DNA from: Antechinus flavipes
Taxonomy: Eukaryota
NCBI RefSeq assembly: GCF_016432865.1
Contig: NC_067398.1
Location: 117,304,001-117,368,000, forward strand
Direction of reading: 5' to 3'
Length of the DNA: 64,000 bases
The stretch's first letter is position 1, and the number at the start of each line of letters is the position of its first letter. Of this stretch, positions 8,685 to 64,000 are shown piece by piece. The notes beneath the pieces were generated by a model. That model had not been told where the DNA came from, did not search any database, and saw nothing but the letters and a program-made list of their open reading frames with translations. Position numbers and translations under genes: made by a program.

Positions 8685-8937
8685 NNNNNNNNNNNNNNNN
8701 NNNNNNNNNNNNNNNNNNNNNNNNNNNNNNNNNNNNNNNNNNNNNNNNNNNNNNNNNNNNNNNNNNNNNNNNNNNNNNNNNNNNNNNNNNNNNNNNNNNN
8801 NNNNNNNNNNNNNNNNNNNNNNNNNNNNNNNNNNNNNNNNNNNNNNNNNNNNNNNNNNNNNNNNNNNNNNNNNNNNNNNNNNNNNNNNNNNNNNNNNNNN
8901 NNNNNNNNNNNNNNNNNNNNNNNNNNNNNNNNNNNNN
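8685..8937. other. Assembly gap (253 N)
   Basis: Run of N. Confidence 0.99.
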
Positions 8938-9614: not shown

Positions 9615-11709
9615 GAGTCTTTGGGGGAGATGGCTGCACACCCCAAACGGGGATAGGCGCACTCAAGGCTAGTTTTTCTGTGGTCTCTGCTCTGAATGTG
9701 TAGCCTCCCTCTCTCTCTTACAAATGACCCAAGGCAGAGATACTCAGTGAAAAGCAGAATTGAAGACAAAAAGGAGAAATAGAGTCCTAACAGGCCGTGG
9801 CGGCAGTCTGAAAAGAAACACGTGTTCTCGAGGTGAGCTTGGAAAAGTCTGGGGTCTATTGGCTGGGTCAAGGGAGACCCAAGGGACTAGCCCTCCTAAA
9901 AATTGCTTTGGTAGACTGCTATTGACCCAATGGTAAAGGACTATCTAAGGAGACTCTCTTGGATGACTGCGGGGCATGAGGGTAACAAAGGACCTCTGCT
10001 GACAACTTGGTTTGAGACCAAGTTGTAAAAATGGGGCAGAAGCAGTCCAAAGATTTATGTCAGGACATTAGTTAGGAAATTCAAGAAAAATAGAGCTCTG
10101 GGTCTGTCTGTGTATGTATGTTCATCTGCTTTGCATTCTGTTCTGTGTTAAAAGTTAGCAAGCTCATAAGAGATAAGAATCCAGCCTCTGTGTTTCAGGC
10201 TTCATTTAGAGTATTAATTCTTTCAGAGTGGATTAGGTAAGAGAAAGAAGTTTGAAAAAAATCTTTTTCTCTCTCCTCCCTCTAGCTAACAGCTTCAGCT
10301 TTGTGGGGAGAAGGGGGAGGAGGGAGAGAAGGAAAAAAATGTTTAAGGTAAAGCAAGGATTTGGTGTTTAACTCTTTCCTGGCTTACTAAAGAAAAGAAG
10401 TTTGAATGGAATATCTAGATAAATTTCAGGAAATCTCACAAACTAAAATATGGGTTAATTTTAAAATAATTTTAAATTGGTATGTTGGAAACAAGAAACT
10501 GCAGATATTGGAAGGGAGGAATAAAAATTGGTTAAGAGAGGTAAATAGATGAACACGGGGGTTCTCTGACTTGTTGGACCTGTGGGAAAACTAAGCGTGT
10601 TTCTTTAAAAAAAAAATTGTGCCAGGAGAAGAAAGAAAAATCATTATTAGCAAGTTTGCTTTCACGAAATTAGAGAACAGAAAGTTTAAGAAGACTAAAC
10701 TGGGTAATTGTCTACAACATTTGATTAAGAGTTTGGGGAACTTACTATATTTTAAAGAGGTACTATAATTTTGAAATTGAAATAAAATTGAAATTGGAGG
10801 AAATAATTTTACTGTTGCCTTGCACATGTTAGATTTATTCTGGGTAAAAATCTTAAGAATTGCTTGAATATTGTGGCCTTTACATCTGAAGAGAAAAACT
10901 TTTCTCTTTTTTATTATTTGGTTAGACTTCAAATTGAAATTCAAAATTATTGTTATTAAACAAAATGCCAGTAGTTTACCTTGGGGTGGGGGGTCATGTT
11001 TGTATCTCCCTACTTAAATGGTATATTGCTTTTTTAAAGTATTGGGTAATTTGTAAGCTATATTATAAGTTTTATGAAATTTGGTTCAAAATTAATTGTG
11101 AATCTTAAAGTTTAAAAAAAAAAAGGTGATTTAAAGACAAGGGAAAAGAGAGATTGATTTACAAAAGCACCTAATAGTTTAAATGGAGCATATAGTCAGA
11201 AGAGTCACAGAGAGATAGCTGTGAGACAGGATATGTTTTTGCAGGAGGAGAGCAGCAGTGGAAAGCTTCAGCCGCTTTTGGCTGAAGAAAGCTAACTTTT
11301 TTAAAGGGACACACTGCTCTTTCAAGATATTAATTGATTGAACATTTGTTTCTTTAGATACATAATGTTTTTTGTGTTTAAAGAATATAATCAGAAATAT
11401 GATATATAGTTTGAAAGAATTATTTCAAAAAGGTTTAATTGATGTTTTTAAGAGCTTTTCAGATTCTTTTATGTAAAAATAGGAAGTTTTAATTAACTGC
11501 CAATTATTTAAAAGGGACTCCAAGGATCATAGTTTTTGCCTCTGTCCTTTTGAAAATGTTTTTGTTATGGACAATATGTAGTTTGGGATTTTTCTATGTA
11601 TTGGGTATATTAAAAAAGCAAAATGATTGATATAATATTCAATTTATGGAACATCTACTTGGGTATATGAGAATTGTGTGAGCATTTTGGGATAAATTTC
11701 TTATTGTTA

Positions 11710-14137: not shown

Positions 14138-15993
14138 ATGAATTGTGCATGCAAAATCTTAATAGTAGTATTGATCTGGGGTACTATACTGGGGCTTTTT
14201 CTGGTAGTGTTAGATTTTATTTTCTGTTGGACAGTGTTACTTCAACTCAGAAATCTGACATATTATTTGGTAGAATGGAGGCCAAACAAAACATACACAG
14301 AAGGGGATTGTGCTTTCTATCCCTAGGTATAACACTACCCTTGTTGCACCAATCCCTAATCCTTTACTGAAGGAAGGCAATAGCTTCTAGAACTTGCTTC
14401 AGGTTATTGCCGATACATTTTATCTTAAAAACTGCTGGATATGTGGGGAACCTGAACAACTCACATGATGGCCCTGGATACCTGTCCCTTTATATCCAGC
14501 CTGGATATTGAGTAATAGATCAGTTGTACATGACGGTACAGGATTTTGGTCAGATCAGGAGGACCATCAGTGGAAACTAACGAATGCTGTCCCAGGAGGA
14601 CATTGTTTAAATCAAACAGGCACAGGGCCTTGGATGGGAGAAAATAAATGCAAATGGGCTTTTACCCGCCGGCCAGAAAAGGTAGATATTATAGATTGTA
14701 GTAAATATAAAAATAGATGGGATAAAACAAGTGTTGTTTGTGATGATGGGTCAGTGACTAAATGTACTCATCAACATGCAGCAGAGGGTAGTGAAGAATG
14801 CTTGAAGGAATTTAAAAAGAAACCAACTTGTCAAACACCCCGAGATTTATGGAGATGTTTAAGGTTAAATAGTACAAAGTCAGGTACTGCTAGTACTGTA
14901 ATGGGATGGAAGTGGGAAAATAGTAATGAAACTATTAGAAGAATGTTTAGTAACTTTTGGAGTAATATAGATTTTACTGGGAAAAATGATTGTAATTGCA
15001 CTTGGATGCCTGAAAAGCAACTTTGGAAGTGCAATTCAAACCATGAAAGGGGGACCGTTAGACCCACGGAATGTTATATATTTCCCATCCTCAATAGGAG
15101 CTTTTATCTTCTGGCATGAGAAAAACCCAGCTTTAAGGGGACACTATTGGATTTATGGCCAGATGACATATACTCACCTCCCAAGGAATTGGACTGGGTG
15201 TTGTTATATAGGTACAATAAGGCCCAAGTTTTCCTTCCTTCCAGAAGATAGTGACAATTAGGAATACGACTAGCATAGATACTTCTCTGATTCAAACAGG
15301 CGATGCTAATGGATGGGAAGTACATGGCCCTCAGAAAGAATCATCAAAGAGTAAGGGCCAGCCACATGGGTCAGGATGGAGGCTGGGGGTATAGGACAAC
15401 AATATATATATTAAATAGGTTAATTAAATTGCAAGCAGTTCTGGAGATAACAACTAATCAAACTGCTCAGGCCCTTGATCTGCTAGCTGATCAAGCCATT
15501 CAAACACGAGAAGCTGTTTTACAGCATCGACTTGTCTTAGATTATTTGCTAGCAGAGGAAGGAGAGGTCTGTGGAAAATTAAACTTGTCCACTTGTTGCA
15601 TGCAAATTGATGATAATGGGTGAGTAGTAAAAGAAATTACAAAAGGCATTCGCAGAATAGTTCATGTGCCTACACAGGAGTGGAAATTTCTTTTCTAATA
15701 GTTGGTAGTCCTGGTTTGATGGTAGCTGGTGGAAATGACTTTTATGGTATGGACTAATTGCAATCAGTGGCATTATATTGTTACCATTATGTTTGCCCTG
15801 CATGATTACATTAATAACCAGAATAGTTCAATGCTCCCTATCGAAATTATTGCTTCCAGAGGATGCTGTTAAGATGATGATTCTCCAGAAAAGAGACAGG
15901 AGGATGCTGGAAGGAGATAATTCTGATAGTGAACTTGACAAACAATGTGTAAGTCTGTTAACTGACTTTGAGCAATGTGTAAGTTCTTCATAG
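14138..15993 (+). pseudogene. env: ERV env remnant, ERV3/HERV-I-like
   Basis: Hydrophobic leader from ATG 14138; CWIC (CXXC) at 14433-14444; YWIYG...LPRNWTGCCYIGTIRP; [26 protein letters not shown]; immunosuppressive domain [15 protein letters not shown] from 15519; CX7CC ([10 protein letters not shown]) at 15570-15599; TM anchor. Stops and frameshifts present. Confidence 0.92.
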
Positions 15994-52260: not shown

Positions 52261-55006
52261 TCCCAGAAGTGCTACCGTGGTTCCCTTTCTAAGAAAAAGC
52301 AGATTTTATTATTATCGTTTTAAGTAACAGTACAATTGTGTTATGAGTGATAGTTGGTTGAAAAAAGTAGGGCTCAGAAGGCGGAAATGATGAATCCAAG
52401 GTCATGGCAAATTCGTAGTCAGCCCTGGTTTCAAACGCGAATCCCCGGAGCCCCCGCAGCCTTTCTTGTCTCTCTCGATTTGGCTCCTTCTCGCTGTTTT
52501 CGGTCTGATGGGCCCCATTCATGGATATATCGGTTGAAGCAGTTTAGTTTGAGAGCTTAAGTTGGACTGCAGTATCGATCTTTTTTTTTTTTTATCCAGG
52601 GCCGCCTTAAACCGTTCATCTTTTTCACCCTTCTCCATTTTCCCGTATTTCCATCTTGCCCATCTTTCCAGGATAATCTTGTGTGGAGTTCCCTAAACCT
52701 TTTCCATGAGAAAAGGTTTTTCCTTTTCGTTCAATCATGATCCCATTTGGATTTTTCTTGGCCAAAGATAGTGGTTTTTCCCATTTCTTTCTCTGCTGAT
52801 CTTTCTTGGGGGAGTGAGGCAAACAGGGTTTAGTGACTTGCCCAGGATCACACAGATAGGAAGGAAGCCTCAAGGCCAAATTTGATTTCAGGAATGAGTC
52901 TTCATTCCAGGGCCGGTACCTCTGTGCTTAAGTGCGCCACCTAGCCACCCTATGGCATCCATCATCTTAGCATCTGCCAACTCAATAAACATAATGGCAC
53001 CTAATATTTTACATGTTTCTGTCCTCAAAATGTTAAATCTGGAGGTTGTCCATTTTACAGATTCAGAAAGCTTTAAGCGTTTTGCCTGTGGTCTTGAAAC
53101 TAGTATGAGATATGCAAAACACCTGGTAGTCATTTCTCTCGATTCCTAAGGCCAAAAACTTTTTACTGTTATTCGGCCTCCTACACTAGTAACTTGTCTT
53201 ATCTTTCCCACCCAACTGTAGGCCTTTTGTCCATATTAATCTTGGCTAAAGTGCCCGTACAGGACTTTGAATGAGGAAATAAAGAGAAATCTTGGTTTGG
53301 GAATCTGGAAGCCCAGACTCTTCCTTTAAAGGTAACCAAGACACTTCCTCGCCCTGAGCCTTATGCATAGGGCTGAAGTAGGTAATTTTGTCCATTGAAT
53401 GAGTTGAAATAGGCCTCAGAGAGCATCCAGTCCACTCATGCCTGAAAAGGAATCCATATCAAGTGATCAGCCCCCACTAGACTTTCAAATGCTTTAGGAA
53501 TCCATTACTTTTGGAGACAATCCATTCCCGTAACTTTCAAAATCTGTACCCTGTTAACTTCTATAAGCCATGAAAAAAATATAGTCCAGAATCAGCTAGA
53601 TGGCAGGGTAGATAAGAGCACAGGCCCTCAAGTCAAGCGGACCAGAGTTCAAATGCAGCCTCAGATCATAGGTCTTTGTGTCTTCCTGGGCAAATCATTT
53701 AACCCCAACTGCTTCAAGAAAAATTTTTATGTAGTTCCAATTTTTCTCCTGTATGAAAATCCACTATTTTAGAACTATCATGCCATAATTCTCTAATTCT
53801 CTCCAAATTAAATATGTATAGTTCAGTTGAAGTTTCAATTCCTAGTCTCATCATTTTGGTTACTTTTTATGTGTGACCACTGTATAGGAAATGCTCAGTG
53901 ACTGATTCTGATTAGTGTGTCAAATGCAATAAAAATATAACAAATGTGTGTTAATTACAAATATGTAAAGACTTTCTAAGAAAGTTTTCTTTGGGGCTGA
54001 GCTTTTCTCAGATTCTAGAAGAATGACTAAATAGATTTATTCAGCAATCAGATTATAAGAATTGACTCAGGACTGAATTTAAGTTGGGGCAAATTTACAT
54101 TGAGGTAAAGAAGCTATTTATTTAAAAATTAGAAGGCCCTTGTCTATATAGCATCCCTTAAGGACTGTACATTTTACACGATAATTCTAAATGAAAATTT
54201 GTATAGTAGAACCTAATGATAAAAGGGCTTCCTATGAAGCTTTTTCAATATACTACTATGTATTAAGAGACAGGAGGAATCTTAAGATCCATCCACAATA
54301 TTAAAACCCATAATTATAGGATTACATAAGGACAATGTTTGGGAACAACCCTGACTTTCAAGGGGGTGACAGAATTTTAAGGAATAACTAACCTCTGGGA
54401 CCCATCTTAACATCTATGCCTTAGGCATGCTAAACATCTAAGATAACAATGAGTCCTAAAAGTCCCCAAATGTGATCCACATCAATATTCCCATTGGGAA
54501 TCTTACTCTTGGGGAAGGGGAGAGTTGGTATACATGGACTACATATACATAGATCCTTTGACTCTGAATGACTTTTCCTCTTCTCCAATGATCCACAGCT
54601 AATTTATAGCTTGTATTATAAGCTAGCAAAACACTCATTTCCTATTTATAAAGCTCTCCCAATTCCCCTACATAAGGGGTTAATGATCTCCCCCCCCCCC
54701 CAAGGCAGAGATTAGTTCTACTCGATACAACAAGCCAGTACAAATCTACAGAAAGATTCAATCAATCCATCAAAAGAAAATCATTAAGTTAACCCTCCAT
54801 TCACAGGCATCAGACTCCTTGTTAAATAGTTGTTTATTGGAAAAAGTGGGCTGAGGAGGGGTCACTAGATTCACCAGAGAGCAACAACACCACACAAGTT
54901 AGGAGTGATGGGAGAGGTCAGCACAAAGCTCTGGGATCTCAGCCTCTTCCTGGACTGTGAGGGATGGCCTGGAGTGTTAGGGCATACCCAGATGGAAGGC
55001 CTTGAC

Positions 55007-57536
<2,530 letters not shown>

Positions 57537-58679
57537 GTTTTCCTTGGCTATGTTGGTAGTTTCCTGGGTGGAGATAGTAAAGTATAAGCCAGACTTTTCT
57601 GTAATAATGGCATAATCCTGTTTATTATGTAATTCAAGATCAGATCATTCTCACTACCCAACTTCTCTTTCCCCTGCTCTGTGTATCTCTACTTCCTTAA
57701 TTTTTTTTTTTTTTTTTTGCTTCTCTACCTTTCTAAAACTTAGGGTGGAGATCCAAATCCAGGGTGTGGCTGCTCTAGCAGAAAACAAGGACTGAGAAGT
57801 CTGGGCTACAATGAAAGGAAATTAGTTTGGGACCCTCTGGCATATCCACCATCAGCTCTAGAGTCACCTTATTTAGATGCACACAAGGGCCTGTTAAATA
57901 ATGTCTGCCTCAATCTTCTCATTTAATAAAGCAACAAACTCAAGAGGGGAAAGCAAGCTTAGAACCTCAGATGAAAGTGAAAGAAGTATTTTGGGGGCAG
58001 CAAAGAATAGACCCCCAACCAACTAACAATTTCCAAAACCCAGAGCTAGAATACAGGTTTCCTAATTCCCTAGGCTCCTGTTTCTTTTCTTTATACCACA
58101 TATCCTTTCCTTGCCAACCCCTCAAGGGCATTTCAAGGTCAGGCTGCTCTGTCCAGTAAGCTTAGAGATACTTTCACAAAATGAACATAGTAGATGACTA
58201 GAGGTATTAGGTTGACCCCTGTGAAGGGCAAGAGCCCAGCCTCCATTTTAAAAGACAGCTCTGCCTTCCATCATTCCCAGTCAGCTGACTGCTACAGGAG
58301 CTAAAAGGGGCAGTGAAAAGGGAGGCAGCAGCAAGTCAGACATGTCCTGGGGGGCAGACGTGTCCAGACAGTTTCCCTCTAGATTGCTCCTTTCCATCAT
58401 TCCATCCACAGTTGCAACCTAGGTAGCTCAAGGTCACTCCCGATTAAGAAAAGCTACAGGATGTGATGGAAGGCATTAGTGGAAGGCGATAGCAAACCCC
58501 GATGGTAATTTCCCCTGTAATCGGGTTTCCCTTCTTCTCCAACTCACTCCCTTCATTAAATTTTCCTAAGGTAGTTATTGCCCGGAAACACCAGGACCAG
58601 GCCGAGCCATGCCCACAATTGTACCCCCTTCGCATTCCTCCCTCGTGGCAAGTCGTCCTCTTCCCATCCTCAGCTGCGG

Positions 58680-59460
58680 CTGGGCTCTAGAACCCTCAAG
58701 CCCCCACTCCCCTCCCCCACTCTCTCCCCGGCGGAGGGCAGCTCTCGGGCGCGCCCTCCCCCGCGTGACTCAGCCTTCCGCCCCGGCTGTCGCATTGCGC
58801 ACAAAGCATCAACATTCCAGTTCGGGAATTGTGAAGCGGGATGAGGGGACCAGCGACCTGCCTGTTCCCAGCACCACCTTGTCCCAAAGGGCAGCGCGGG
58901 TCGGGGCACAGGTACGGGTTCGGCCGCAGGGGTTCTATCGGGCGCTCCTCGTAGCCTAAGATCCGAACTCCCTCAGCCCCATCAGCCTCGCTCACCTGGC
59001 CTTCGGAAGCGGGCTGCGGGCCTCGGTGGTGGGCTTACCGGCAGGAAGAAGACTGCTTACGGTCGGGAGCCGAACTTCTGCGCTTTCCGAATCCGAACGT
59101 CGCCTATTGAACTCAGGAGGGGCGGAGCAAAGGCGGAGTCTGACCATTTAAAGAGACCGCGCCTCCTACCCGGGGGTTGGGGGACGGAAGGGGCGGGGAA
59201 AACTGTTTTCGCCCAATCAACGAGCGAGAATGCTAAAGCCAGGGATAGCGAATGACCATACGCAGCAACGCTCCCAGAGCTCCAAAAAAGGGACGGGGGA
59301 GAGATGTTCTGCTTCTGTTCCCGCCCTACCTTCGGACGTGACTGGGACCACGTCCTTTGGGTCGCGCACCACCCCCCCCAAACCCCAGGCAGCTGCTGCT
59401 CCCCCAACCCCCCCCTCGCCGCCCCCATCCCAGCTTAGGACAGCGTGACGCACACATTTT
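58680..59460 (-). promoter_or_regulatory. ALDOA housekeeping-type CpG promoter and leader exon(s)
   Basis: CpG island; TATA-like TTTAAAT ~59146-59152 (-); donor GACC|GTAAGC ~59060; HRE pair at 59334-59355. Confidence 0.7.
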
Positions 59461-60317
59461 CGTCCTGAGGGAAGAGTAGGAAGATGGGGGAGGGGTGTAC
59501 AAAAGGAGGATAGATGAATGTTGGCAGGTGATGGGGTGGGGGGTGGGGGGGAGCGCCAGAAGATGAAGCAAAGTGGCTGAGGAGGAAAGGAGGAAGCTAG
59601 ACATTGGGGTGATTTACCCAAGCACTATTTCCTTGGTATTTTCCCCTCCCAGATTACCCAAACTTCCTGGAGAGGTACTCAGATCTGCCTCCACTTTTAT
59701 GTCCCATTCCATTTTGTCCCCTCCACCCTCTCTTTGCTGCTTGCAGTAACCCTTCCACGAAATCTGATCTCCTCCCAAGCCCCGATCTTCCTTAAAGGTC
59801 AGCTCAAGCCCCGTCAGTTCCCCTCCCTCCTCCGCTCCCCTTCGAAGATGCAGCTGCGCAACTTTAGTGCAATCCTCTAGACAGCCAGCCCGGTGGCCGC
59901 GCCCTATCTTGCAGGAGCCAGCAGCGACAGGTCTCAGCTGGCTAGAATGCTAAACCTGGCCGGTTCGAGCCGGAGGTTCGATGGTTCCATCCCCTCAAGC
60001 GCTAGATAAAACCCAAGGGAGGGAAGCGGGAGGTCATTTTGTCCTTTGGATAATACCCAAATTTCATTCCTACATGCACCATCTGCCCAATTAGTTCCCA
60101 AATCACATTCCTCCTACTTTGCTTAGAATTTAGATTTCCCTGGACTTTGGCATCATTTCATTACTTTCCCTCTTTCCAACTTTCCCCCACCTACCCTTCC
60201 TCACCCTTATTAAAACCACTTTTCACCAATTCTTATTTTCACTCCCTCATTATTCCCTCCCGCCCAAGAATCCAGCCCACCCCATTTTCTCTGCTCAGCT
60301 ACCCTCTCAATACCCAC

Positions 60318-60510
60318 CTAAATGGAGCCTGGAGGTAGTTTAGACTCAAGCCTGGGCAGTGAGTGCTCAGGCAGGGGTTGGTTGGAGTTATAAAGTACTC
60401 CCCACCCTCCTCTTGGAATTTTCCCGACCTTCTCTTATGACCCCTGCCCTTTCCCCATCCCAGCTTCTCTGGCAGGGAACTATATTTAGGGGAAACCTGA
60501 AGCCCCTGAC
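60318..60510 (-). promoter_or_regulatory. ALDOA muscle-type promoter and short leader exon
   Basis: Minus strand: MEF3 TCAGGTTTC (60492-60500), MEF2 CTAAATATAG (60480-60489), TATA TTTATAA (60388-60394), donor TAG|GTGGGT at 60318/60317. Confidence 0.75.
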
Positions 60511-61626
60511 ATTCGGGCCAGGATAGGGCTTAGAGCAGGGGAGGGGAAGAAATTAGAGGAGGGGGAGTGACCAAGAGGTCTTCTGCTAGGTAGAGAGTGA
60601 TCTAATAGACCGAAGGCAAAAGCAGGCAGAGAAAGGCAGACATATGTAACCACTTCCCACTCACCAGCAGTTGAGTTGCCATCCTTTTCTATCGTGATCA
60701 GTGATGCTGCCCTGCCTGCCAAAGGAGATACAGGGTTGAAATCTTTACGGTAGTAAACCACAAAGTAGTTAGTATTAAGTCTCCTTTCTCCCAACCTTAG
60801 GCCTTCCTTGATTCTCTTCCTGGACCTCAATAGTGTCAGTCCTTATTCAGAGTACTTATTTCAGAGTTGGGAAGAGAAAGGTATACACATATTTCCTAAG
60901 AGAATGGGGAGTTGGCAGATGTAGCAGTACTAGTCCCACATAGGTCACCCTGAGGCAGCTGAATGGCTCAGTGGATAGTATGTTGGGCCTGGAAGCTGTA
61001 AGTCCTGAATTCAAATCCAGCCTCAGATGCTTACTAACTAGGTGACCTTGGTCAATTAAGTTTTTCCCCCCTTTTCTTTTTTTGTCTTAATCCACTGGAA
61101 AAGGAAATAGAAAACCATTCCAGTATCTTTGCCCATGAATGGCATGGTTCACAGAGTTATGAACAGTGGGACGTGACTGAACAACAAAGGTCACCCTGAA
61201 ATCTTAACTCTGGGCAGAATTTCCTGAACTCAGCCTCGTCTGAGGAGGAATGAATACTACCAGTCCTAACTTGAGCCATGTCCCTTCACTCCTCTCTACT
61301 GGTAGGGGTAAGGCTGAGCAGGAACCAAGAATTTACTCAAGAAAACTAGCCTCTCATGAATTTTCTCCAAGGTGCTTGAGGTCCCCAGCTCTTAAGAAGG
61401 TTTACTTCTTTTAGGGTAACTGCTCTCTGCATCTTGCTAGGAGAGCCTGGATCTTCTCTGCTTAGGTCCAATGAAGACCAAAGGATGGCCCGCCCTTGGG
61501 AACAGGTGGGCAAGACAGTTGGGGCTCCAATGAGGTGGTGATCCTACTGCCAGGGAATGTTTCTCAGCACTTGGGGTAGACAGGTCCTCTGGAAGGCCAC
61601 GTTCCATAACCGTGAACAAACGATCC

Positions 61627-61740
61627 TCATCTGAGCTTGATTTCAAAGCAAAGGCAATTGAGGCTTTGACAATCGGGCAGCTGGCAGGCACAGGCACAGT
61701 CACACAGTGGGAAGCATCTGGGGCACTGGGGAGTCCAACC
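61627..61740 (-). CDS. Terminal coding exon of a cysteine-rich uncharacterised protein upstream of ALDOA (5' exons lie beyond the window)
   Basis: Acceptor ttttccctcag then phase-0 frame GWTPQCPRCFPLCDCACACQLPDCQSLNCLCFEIKLR* (9 Cys in 37 aa). Recalled match to the C-terminus of human LOC112694756 (...PRCCPLCDCACTCQLPDCQSLNCLCFEIKLR); not database-verified. Confidence 0.8.
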   Translation of the reverse strand, partial: GWTPQCPRCFPLCDCACACQLPDCQSLNCLCFEIKLR

Positions 61741-61989
61741 CTGAGGGAAAAGGATGAAAAGGAATGATAGGAAAAGTTAAAAGAGGAAAGCAATAAGGGT
61801 TGTGAAGTTCAGAGAGGTTACAGGAGTGTTGTAGGAAACAAAATATGATAGCTCCCATTTAGAGAAACACTTTTCAAAGTGCTTTATTCACAACAACCCA
61901 GTGAGACATTATAAGCATCTTTATCTGCATTATATGGATAAACAAGGTTCAGAAAGAATAAATGCCTTGCCCTTGATCCTAAAAAAAGC

Positions 61990-63240: not shown

Positions 63241-64000
63241 ATATAAATATAATGAATGTTAAGAGCTAGATTGGAACTCATTTTGATTCTAAATCTATTG
63301 CCCTTTACTTTTTGCTATGTTGCTTTTAAAGGATAGTGGGGATATGAAAGTTGATATATCATTCAAGATCACTATATAACAATGTGTTCATTTCATGTCT
63401 AGTCTTAAAATAGATTCTCATGTAGAAGTAAATGCAATTGGATAGTGATTTTTGACTCTATTTAAAGACAGCTAATTTCCCCTCTCAGAATCACAAAAAG
63501 AAGGTTGGAAAAATGGCCAAAAAACAACTACCAGCTAAGAGAAAGAGATAATGGTTAGAGAGACTGTCTTCCAAGGAGTAGGAACAATTTGTCACTGAAA
63601 CAGCAGTATGTGGGAAATATTCGACTTCTTCCTTTTCCCCCTCTAGAGCAATGTATTGGATTTAGGCCAGCCAAACTGAAGCACTTCCCCCCTTCCCTCT
63701 CCCCACCCTGAATTCTCCTGGAGGGGTATGGGATTAAAAGGTCAAATGTTTAAAGCCAGAAAGAGGACTAGATATCAGTCACAGTTAAAAAGCCTGATCA
63801 AGACCTGCCCAGTCCAGAAATAGGAAAATGGCATTTACAAGATCAGAAGTTTCAGGATTAGGTGTCATATTCTTTAAGAGATCATGTTATCTCCAGTGTT
63901 GGTGTGTGTATGTCTGTACACCCAGTACAGAGGAGGAGGACAGGACACTACACGTGTATACACACACATACACACACACACACACATTCTTTATGCTAGT

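What the first reader, a model, noticed from the sequence alone, without database searches (positions are those of the whole stretch)
57537..61626. Possible bicistronic transcript: Cys-rich ORF followed by ALDOA
By eye I found no minus-strand AATAAA/ATTAAA between the stop at 61627 and ~58000, and the region runs directly into the ALDOA promoters. The Cys-rich mRNA may therefore splice onto ALDOA coding exons and share its poly(A) site. That would give an mRNA carrying two conserved ORFs, coupling them through reinitiation, leaky scanning, NMD or promoter interference.
Basis: inference. Interest (0 to 1): 0.7.

Follow-up and report, generated by a model that had tools for sequence, protein, structure and literature searches.

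The report
Known upstream gene sharing ALDOA transcripts
The cysteine-rich exon is the last coding exon of a small, conserved membrane-protein gene that sits just upstream of ALDOA and lacks its own standard poly(A) signal; GENCODE curators already described this gene in human and mouse as co-transcribed with ALDOA, so this is a marsupial copy of a known oddity.

Summary
The window is Antechinus flavipes: it is 100% identical over 12.4 kb to GCA_016432865.2. On the minus strand there is no AATAAA or ATTAAA from the stop (61629-61627) down to 57928. Alone this is weak evidence, because 20% of dinucleotide shuffles also have none.

The 37-codon Cys-rich exon (61740-61627) is the last of four coding exons of LOC127556114. 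This gene is the orthologue of human LOC112694756/ENSG00000285043 (139 aa, one TM helix and a Cys-rich tail), which is conserved from coelacanth to mammals.

Mudge et al. [quoted passage not shown] They describe it as co-transcribed with ALDOA, with no polyadenylation evidence before the ALDOA ATG, and note that ALDOA keeps its own downstream promoters.

New evidence here:
- Rodent RNA contigs join the CDS, a post-stop splice donor, a small leader exon and the Aldoa ATG.
- That small leader exon is conserved in the window (60715-60665) and has a strong donor.
- Turtles and a gecko, where ALDOA is not the downstream neighbour, have AATAAA 155-240 nt after the stop. Four mammals have none for 2.8 kb or more.

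Verdict: the core idea is probably right (about 0.7 for this species) but already known. The proposed translational coupling is untested and unlikely.

The parts
61627..61740 (-). Terminal (4th) coding exon of LOC127556114, the orthologue of human LOC112694756/ENSG00000285043. It has 37 codons plus TGA (61629-61627). The acceptor is cag|G at 61741/61740, phase 0.
   Evidence: Translation. phmmer gives 89-95% identity over all 37 residues at the C-termini of mammalian, turtle and gecko proteins. The exon is identical to the C-terminus of P0141, Antechinus flavipes XP_051844966.1. tblastn maps the other three coding exons beyond the window end, at L001 10001-10837. Nucleotide conservation with Acomys stops exactly at the stop codon.
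60716..61626 (-). Post-stop stretch of 911 nt. It has no AATAAA or ATTAAA. It has two AGTAAA variants (61406-61401, 61337-61332) with U-poor downstream sequence. No 5' splice site scores 5 or more on a rough PWM.
60665..60715 (-). Small conserved ALDOA leader exon of 51 nt. The acceptor AG is at 60717-60716 and the donor GT at 60664-60663 (CTG|GTGAGT). It holds an ATG (60682-60680) that is in frame with the ALDOA ATG if the exon is spliced to exon 2.
   Evidence: The donor scores 10.5, the first strong donor after the stop. The exon is identical in Sminthopsis. It aligns with the echidna and Acomys small exons and shares the donor GTGAGTGGG(A/C)AGTGG with Acomys. In rodent RNA contigs L002/L003 the homologous exon joins the CDS 3' extension to Aldoa exon 2. 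Frame check.
60325..60529 (-). ALDOA muscle-type promoter block and its leader exon. It holds a MEF3-like TCAGGTTTC (60500-60492), a MEF2/TATA-like CTAAATATAG (60489-60480) and a leader-exon donor TAG|GTGGGT after 60318.
   Evidence: Conserved with Acomys (77.6% over 107 nt) and echidna (74% over 203 nt). Donor. Motifs read. The MEF3 site of the aldolase A pM promoter is cited in PMC3157005; the consensus itself comes from my own knowledge.
58600..59400 (-). CpG island, taken to be the housekeeping ALDOA promoter region, with a leader-exon donor CAG|GTGAGC after 58996.
   Evidence: CpG observed/expected 0.72-1.04; GC 0.58-0.62; donor score 11.0. The promoter function is inferred from position and from the P2/P3 promoters reported in PMC6886504.
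57922..57927 (-). First canonical poly(A) hexamer (ATTAAA) after the Cys-rich stop, 3700 nt downstream and inside the intron before ALDOA exon 2. The next one is AATAAA at 57626-57621.
57425..57563 (-). ALDOA first coding exon: acceptor 57564|57563, ATG 57536-57534, donor after 57425.
   Evidence: A 364-aa PF00274 gene is called at L001 18850-21379.
54833..54838 (-). ALDOA's own AATAAA, 169 nt after its TAA (55009-55007). This is the poly(A) signal the upstream gene would borrow.

Best explanation
The interval lies between two same-strand genes of Antechinus flavipes.

Upstream is LOC127556114, a four-exon gene for a 140-aa single-pass membrane protein with a Cys-rich tail. It is the orthologue of human LOC112694756/ENSG00000285043. 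Only its last coding exon, 61740-61627, is in the window. Downstream is ALDOA.

As reported for human and mouse, the upstream gene most likely has no efficient cleavage/polyadenylation site of its own. The proposed path is:
1. Transcripts start at its promoter, which lies beyond the window end.
2. They run past the stop and continue about 1 kb to a conserved small ALDOA leader exon (60715-60665).
3. They splice from its strong donor to ALDOA exon 2 (57563), possibly via other leader exons.
4. They carry all ALDOA coding exons and end at the ALDOA AATAAA (54838-54833).

The RNA would therefore be structurally bicistronic. The 5' ORF would be translated by normal scanning. ALDOA on that RNA lies behind a 140-codon ORF and about 1 kb with 10 AUGs, so it would be translated poorly if at all. 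Nearly all ALDOA protein would come from abundant monocistronic mRNAs made from ALDOA's own promoters downstream of the stop: the muscle-type block at 60529-60423 and the CpG island at 59400-58600. Because the upstream stop precedes many exon junctions, the chimeric RNA is a predicted NMD substrate.

Shown: gene identity, exon and ORF structure, absence of canonical signals, the conserved leader exon and promoters, and the rodent RNA contigs. Taken from the literature: the human and mouse co-transcription. Inferred: everything about RNA in Antechinus, and the NMD and low-translation predictions.
For: Identity:
- phmmer hits over the whole exon, with source names.
- Exact match to the Antechinus protein P0141.
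- The window is 100% identical to GCA_016432865.2 over 12,374 nt.
- ALDOA is called 4091 nt downstream on the same strand.

Literature (PMC6886504):
- The 139-aa CDS lies within the ALDOA 5' UTR.
- No human transcript covers the CDS without also using ALDOA CDS exons (cDNA BC004333).
- There is no polyadenylation evidence before the ALDOA ATG.
- Mouse short reads run on into Aldoa.
- ALDOA has two conserved promoters downstream of the stop.

Rodent RNA contigs:
- L002 holds the full spliced CDS, 376 nt past the stop, a GAG|GTGAGT donor, a 144-nt intron (retained in L002, spliced out in L003), a small leader exon and the first 32 nt of Aldoa exon 2 with its ATG.
- The exon map on the Acomys genome agrees.

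Window features:
- No canonical hexamer for 3.7 kb.
- The small leader exon is conserved with a donor scoring 10.5.

Comparative:
- No canonical hexamer before +2824 in echidna, +3700 in Antechinus and +4018 in Sminthopsis, and none in Acomys.
- Two sea turtles and a gecko, whose downstream neighbour is an SH3-SH2-SH3 gene and not ALDOA, have AATAAA at +155, +163 and +240.
- A Mauremys RNA contig has AATAAA at +161.
Against:
- In dasyurids the post-stop donor used in rodents is absent. No site between the stop and 60665 scores 5 or more. The model therefore needs a 1076-nt terminal exon, or use of a weak site.
- Two AGTAAA variants at +221 and +290 are kept in Sminthopsis and could serve as a weak poly(A) signal.
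- The hexamer gap alone is not significant, with P(0) = 0.20.
- The Logan contigs are de Bruijn assemblies. Continuity of k-mers does not prove that single molecules carry both the CDS and the Aldoa ATG; a start site inside the post-stop stretch would give the same 3' junctions.
- NCBI annotates the gene separately from ALDOA in marsupials.
Confidence: 0.7

Rival explanations
1. Independent gene in marsupials. LOC127556114 transcripts are cleaved and polyadenylated a few hundred nt after the stop at a non-canonical signal (AGTAAA at 61406-61401 or 61337-61332). Only minor read-through reaches ALDOA.
For: Two AGTAAA hexamers lie 221 and 290 nt after the stop and are kept at +224 and +293 in Sminthopsis. 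No good donor exists between the stop and 60665 in dasyurids, unlike rodents and echidna. The zebrafish and reptile homologues are, or appear to be, separate units with their own signals. NCBI lists the gene apart from ALDOA.
Against: AGTAAA is a weak variant, and the 40 nt downstream of each copy are U-poor (15-17% T). Antechinus and Sminthopsis are 93-98% identical across this whole stretch, so retention of the hexamers says little. In human, curators found no polyadenylation evidence before the ALDOA ATG. All four mammals examined lack a canonical signal where reptiles have one.
Confidence: 0.25
2. The Cys-rich exon is only an alternative ALDOA 5' UTR exon. Its ORF acts as a regulatory uORF of ALDOA rather than encoding a functional protein.
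For: The CDS was found inside transcripts previously annotated as ALDOA 5' UTR. Ensembl-derived UniRef entries for Prolemur label the peptide as ALDOA.
Against: The amino-acid sequence is conserved from coelacanth and sturgeon to mammals, including the TM segment and the Cys pattern. Turtles and gecko keep the gene although ALDOA is not downstream. PhyloCSF ranks it as protein-coding. Most ALDOA mRNA starts at promoters downstream of the stop, so the ORF cannot gate most ALDOA translation.
Confidence: 0.04
3. The ORF is a chance open frame in intergenic DNA and there is nothing to couple.
For: Pfam finds nothing. A 118-aa ORF in another frame overlaps the same DNA.
Against: E-values are 5e-14 to 1e-12 against a 1.8-billion-protein library for a 37-residue query, always at the C-terminus of annotated orthologues. 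There is an exact match to an annotated Antechinus protein whose other exons lie upstream.
Confidence: 0.01

Closest known systems
Human ENSG00000285043 / LOC112694756 with ALDOA, and mouse ENSMUSG00000114515 with Aldoa (Mudge et al. 2019, Genome Res, PMC6886504, Suppl. Fig. S3D)
   Same: It is the orthologous gene, with four coding exons, about 139-140 aa and the same C-terminal exon. It sits on the same strand just upstream of ALDOA. It has no canonical poly(A) signal after the stop, and ALDOA's own promoters lie downstream of the stop. The published description is 'cotranscribed with ALDOA'.
   Different: The species differs (a dasyurid marsupial), and no RNA evidence was obtained here. The strong donor that follows the stop in rodents (+374/+376) and echidna (+588) has no counterpart in Antechinus or Sminthopsis; the first strong donor is 962 nt after the stop, at the end of the small leader exon.
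Zebrafish ENSDARG00000097765 (si:ch211-198p11.6) and the reptile homologues (turtles, gecko)
   Same: The protein family is the same and TLCD3B is the upstream divergent neighbour. The zebrafish gene is also adjacent to aldoaa.
   Different: These are separate transcription units. The zebrafish gene has annotated poly(A) features. Turtles and gecko have AATAAA 155-240 nt after the stop and a different downstream gene.
Classical mammalian bicistronic or conjoined loci: SNURF-SNRPN, CERS1(LASS1)-GDF1, and read-through 'conjoined genes' (from my own knowledge; not tested here)
   Same: Two conserved, unrelated ORFs lie on one spliced, polyadenylated RNA, and the upstream gene lacks its own 3' end.
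   Different: In SNURF-SNRPN and CERS1-GDF1 the downstream cistron depends on the shared RNA. Here ALDOA has strong promoters of its own, and the shared RNA is a minor, tissue-restricted form (testis and cancer lines in human and mouse).

Membership tests
LOC112694756 / ENSG00000285043 orthologue group (TM plus Cys-rich tail protein) | The C-terminal exon encodes the conserved W-x-P-x-C-P-x-C ... C-D-C-A-C ... C-F-E-I-K-L-R tail. | tested here: met
   89-95% identity over 37 of 37 residues to mammalian members and 73-75% to turtle and gecko. Identical to Antechinus flavipes XP_051844966.1.
LOC112694756 / ENSG00000285043 orthologue group (TM plus Cys-rich tail protein) | Four coding exons with a TM exon and a middle Cys-rich exon upstream. 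| tested here: met
   tblastn of P0141 on L001 gives ATG at 10001, then exons 10199-10345, about 10682-10837 and 14646-14759. The first three lie beyond the window end.
LOC112694756 / ENSG00000285043 orthologue group (TM plus Cys-rich tail protein) | Synteny: it lies between TLCD3B (divergent) and ALDOA (same strand) in the 16p11.2-like block. | tested here: inconclusive
   ALDOA lies 4091 nt downstream on the same strand. MAPK3 and YPEL3 in the window are known only from first-reader notes and were not checked here. TLCD3B as neighbour was seen in turtle and gecko but was not checked in Antechinus.
Co-transcribed (structurally bicistronic) upstream-CDS/ALDOA unit as described by Mudge et al. 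2019 | No polyadenylation site between the upstream stop and the ALDOA ATG. | tested here: inconclusive
   The canonical hexamer is absent for 3.7 kb, and the same holds in three other mammals against three reptiles. Two AGTAAA variants exist, and actual poly(A) usage could not be measured.
Co-transcribed (structurally bicistronic) upstream-CDS/ALDOA unit as described by Mudge et al. 2019 | Transcripts that contain the upstream CDS also contain ALDOA exons. | not testable with these tools
No marsupial transcript contigs were found. The feature is met at contig level in a rodent and reported for human.
Co-transcribed (structurally bicistronic) upstream-CDS/ALDOA unit as described by Mudge et al. 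2019 | ALDOA keeps independent promoters downstream of the upstream stop. | tested here: met
   This is met at sequence level only. A muscle-type promoter block at 60529-60325 is conserved with Acomys and echidna. A CpG island lies at 59400-58600. Strong leader-exon donors follow 60318 and 58996.
Co-transcribed (structurally bicistronic) upstream-CDS/ALDOA unit as described by Mudge et al. 2019 | A splice donor downstream of the stop links the CDS exon to ALDOA leader or coding exons. | tested here: inconclusive
   The conserved small leader exon ends in a strong donor at 60665|60664. The nearer donor used in rodents is missing in dasyurids.

The most novel reading that the evidence does not exclude
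Loss of the upstream gene's own poly(A) signal may be a shared mammalian trait. The signal is present at +155 to +240 in turtles and gecko and is annotated in zebrafish. It is absent in the monotreme, marsupials and rodent examined. If so, a conserved membrane-protein gene has depended on ALDOA's 3' end, and has been exposed to NMD, since before the three mammalian lineages split. Dasyurids would then have gone a step further and lost the post-stop donor, so the terminal coding exon runs about 1.08 kb straight into an ALDOA leader exon.
Probability: 0.4. Interest if true: 0.45.

Novelty: already known. Interest (0 to 1): 0.3.

Why it matters
Stable mammalian RNAs that carry two unrelated conserved ORFs are rare. 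This locus also lies in the 16p11.2 CNV block. The case is already documented for human and mouse, so the marsupial copy mainly shows that the arrangement (no canonical 3' signal, a conserved leader exon, ALDOA's own promoters downstream) extends across mammals. The comparison with reptiles gives a testable date for when the upstream gene lost its own 3' end. For annotation it matters in two ways. The stretch 61626-57537 is not plain intergenic DNA. And the automated names given to the protein, such as keratin-associated protein or sperm mitochondrial cysteine-rich protein, are misleading.

Tried and rejected
- Pfam on the exon and on four full-length homologues gave no family.
- The bacterial-type promoter/terminator scan is irrelevant for this genome.
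Later protein-level searches of the exon followed the tool's instruction to go on with other tools.
- Searches for marsupial transcript contigs through the protein index found only genome-derived entries.
- Monodelphis and Trichosurus loci came back without DNA. The Notamacropus protein was not on record.
- Nucleotide similarity between the rodent post-stop stretch and Antechinus was not detectable.
- Antechinus-Sminthopsis identity is too uniformly high (93-98%) over 61886-60390 to reveal constraint.
- I read the 61190-60940 stretch by eye as SINE-like. It has only one further 33-nt match in the window, so I do not rely on it.
- The Mauremys RNA contigs carry AATAAA at +161, but one runs on past it and the other diverges after +135. 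They do not prove the cleavage site.
- Contigs L007-L014 are unspliced genomic pieces from an unidentified mammal and were not analysed.
- P0117 and P0125 look human or primate and were not pursued.
- The spliced ALDOA protein was not joined or searched. This is why Antechinus ALDOA transcript contigs could not be looked up.
- A literature search for 'ALDOA' with 'bicistronic' and for the gene identifiers found nothing beyond Mudge et al. 2019.
Full report
**Source of the window**

The window is Antechinus flavipes. The locus L001 was fetched through the protein P0141 and comes from GCA_016432865.2, CM028217.1. It is 100% identical to the window over the whole 12,374-nt overlap. The coordinate map is L001 x = 76386 minus window position.

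**The observation**

A scan for AWTAAA on both strands shows no minus-strand AATAAA or ATTAAA between 61883-61888, upstream of the exon, and ATTAAA at 57927-57922. The next is AATAAA at 57626-57621. Both lie in the intron just before ALDOA's first coding exon (acceptor 57564|57563, ATG 57536-57534).

The acceptor is cag|G at 61741/61740, followed by 37 codons and TGA at 61629-61627.

The gap itself is not remarkable. In 1000 dinucleotide-preserving shuffles of the 3699-nt interval the mean was 1.5 hexamers and 20% had none. A larger gap exists elsewhere on the same strand.

Two AGTAAA variants lie 221 and 290 nt after the stop, each followed by U-poor sequence.

**What the Cys-rich exon is**

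Pfam finds nothing. A full phmmer search of 1.8 billion representatives found six proteins with E-values of 5e-14 to 1e-12. All 37 residues align at 89-95% identity, always at the extreme C-terminus. Turtle and gecko proteins match at 73-75%.

The sources call these proteins "uncharacterized LOC112694756 homolog". Some carry misleading automatic names such as keratin-associated protein 10-x.

The family has about 132-140 aa, one hydrophobic TM segment and a Cys-rich tail. It reaches coelacanth and sturgeon.

The Antechinus flavipes member P0141 (XP_051844966.1, LOC127556114, 140 aa) has a C-terminus identical to the window exon. Its other three coding exons map to L001 10001-10837, which is beyond the window end.

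Conservation with Acomys ends exactly at the stop codon. This fits the Cys-rich frame and not the overlapping 118-aa ORF in another frame.

**What is already published**

Mudge et al. [quoted passage not shown] Supplemental Data and Fig. S3D state the following:
- No human transcript covering the CDS could be found that does not also use ALDOA CDS exons (cDNA BC004333).
- There is no evidence of polyadenylation before the ALDOA initiation codon.
- Mouse short-read coverage runs on into Aldoa.
- ALDOA has two conserved promoters (P2, P3) downstream of the new stop codon, so ALDOA can be made independently.
- The zebrafish homologue is adjacent to aldoaa but is a separate unit with its own poly(A) features.

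**New RNA evidence from a rodent**

Protein P0088 (176 aa, Logan only) sits on short spliced contigs.

Contig L002 (ERR6226392, 1258 nt) contains, in order:
- the complete CDS;
- 376 nt beyond the stop;
- a GAG|GTGAGT donor;
- a 144-nt intron;
- a leader exon of about 70 nt;
- the first 32 nt of Aldoa exon 2, ending in ATG CCC C.

Contig L003 (ERR12549874) has the 144-nt intron removed.

Mapped on the Acomys genome (L006), the pieces are collinear with the three upstream exons and with the post-stop region.

One caveat applies. These are de Bruijn assemblies, so k-mer continuity does not prove that single molecules carry both ORFs. A start site inside the post-stop stretch would give the same 3' junctions.

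**Anatomy of the interval in the window**

Only three blocks between the Cys-rich exon and ALDOA exon 2 are conserved with Acomys and echidna:
- the terminal coding exon;
- 60529-60325;
- exon 2.

The middle block carries TCAGGTTTC (60500-60492) directly followed by CTAAATATAG (60489-60480). These are the MEF3 and MEF2/TATA-like elements known from the aldolase A muscle promoter. The MEF3 site is cited in PMC3157005; the consensus sequences come from my own knowledge. A leader-exon donor follows 60318.

A CpG island at about 59400-58600 ends in a strong donor after 58996.

Upstream of the muscle block lies a 51-nt exon-like element at 60715-60665. It has a pyrimidine tract and AG acceptor and a CTG|GTGAGT donor, which is the first donor scoring 6 or more after the stop on a rough PWM. 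The element is identical in Sminthopsis. It aligns with an echidna element, and it shares its donor context with the Acomys small exon. The Acomys exon is the one that links the CDS extension to Aldoa exon 2 in the rodent RNA.

In dasyurids no site between the stop and 60665 scores 5 or more. Acomys has strong donors at +253 and +374, and echidna at +588. If Antechinus follows the mammalian pattern, its terminal coding exon is a single 1076-nt exon (61740-60665), or a weak site is used.

**Comparative test of the poly(A) argument**

In four mammals with ALDOA 3.1-4.4 kb downstream, the first canonical hexamer after the stop is as follows:

| Species | First canonical hexamer after the stop |
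|---|---|
| Antechinus | +3700 |
| Sminthopsis | +4018 |
| Echidna | +2824 |
| Acomys | none |

In two sea turtles and a leopard gecko the downstream gene is an SH3-SH2-SH3 adaptor, and a TLCD3B-like gene lies upstream and divergent. In these species AATAAA lies at +155, +163 and +240. A Mauremys RNA contig has AATAAA at +161.

This contrast is stronger than the single-species gap. It fits loss of the gene's own signal in the mammalian stem, but seven genomes are few.

**Likely mechanism and its limits**

The best-supported reading has these steps:
1. Transcripts from the upstream promoter pass the stop.
2. They meet no efficient cleavage site.
3. They are spliced from the 60665 donor into ALDOA exons.
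4. They end at ALDOA's AATAAA (54838-54833), 169 nt after its stop.

In a model spacer of 989 nt (61626-60665 joined to 57563-57537) there are 10 AUGs. With a 140-codon first ORF as well, leaky scanning or reinitiation at the ALDOA AUG is improbable.

The last of those AUGs (60682-60680) is in frame with ALDOA and would add 15 residues.

ALDOA protein should come almost entirely from its own promoters. The upstream stop would precede many exon junctions, so NMD sensitivity is predicted.

None of this could be tested in Antechinus.

- I did not analyse the unspliced contigs L007-L014 from an unidentified mammal.
- I did not pursue P0117 and P0125, which look human or primate.

**Verdict**

The identity of both genes is settled. 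The co-transcription idea is supported by orthology, published human and mouse evidence, rodent contigs and a mammal-versus-reptile contrast, but it is unproven for this species; I put it at about 0.7. An independent 3' end at an AGTAAA variant remains the main rival, at about 0.25. The arrangement is already known, so interest is modest.

Noticed in passing
window 60682-60665 with 57563-57537 (minus strand); L006 17828-17830: The small leader exon carries an ATG that is in frame with the ALDOA start if spliced to exon 2, giving a 15-residue N-terminal extension in Antechinus. In Acomys the last three bases of the homologous exon are ATG, and the annotated 418-aa ALDOA model starts there. The rodent RNA contig L002 has no ATG at that spot. 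A conserved N-terminally extended ALDOA isoform may exist.
   Followed up: partly
window 61437-61793 (minus strand): A 118-aa ORF in another frame overlaps the Cys-rich exon and runs 190 nt past its stop. It has no homologue, and nucleotide conservation with Acomys stops at the Cys-rich stop, so it is probably chance.
   Followed up: partly
L015, L016 (sea turtles), L017 (Eublepharis): In reptiles the Cys-rich gene keeps its TLCD3B-like divergent upstream neighbour. It is followed by an SH3-SH2-SH3 adaptor gene 3.5-3.7 kb downstream instead of ALDOA, so the link to ALDOA is not universal in amniotes.
   Followed up: partly
protein clusters: Automatic names for this family are inconsistent and misleading. 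They include keratin-associated protein 10-x, sperm mitochondrial-associated cysteine-rich protein, late cornified envelope-like proline-rich protein 1, male-specific sperm protein Mst84Db, elongation factor Tu, G-protein gamma 4 and agouti signalling protein. One 90% cluster also holds an unrelated 451-aa protein from a Logan contig (P0041).
   Followed up: no
window 61190-60940 (minus strand): This stretch looks SINE/MIR-like by eye, and an A-rich run at about 61090-61060 precedes it. Only one other 33-nt match occurs in the window. The A-rich run could cause internal oligo-dT priming artefacts in 3'-end data.
   Followed up: partly
window 61886-60390 versus 60266-58530: Antechinus-Sminthopsis identity is 93-98% from the intron upstream of the Cys-rich exon through the muscle promoter block. 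It drops to 63-88% in the GC-rich and CpG-island part. The cause was not resolved; it could be constraint or a CpG-driven difference in mutation rate.
   Followed up: no
window 8685-8937 and 63960-64000: There is an N run of 253 bases, which was left untouched. A (GT)n-type microsatellite lies at the window end.
   Followed up: no
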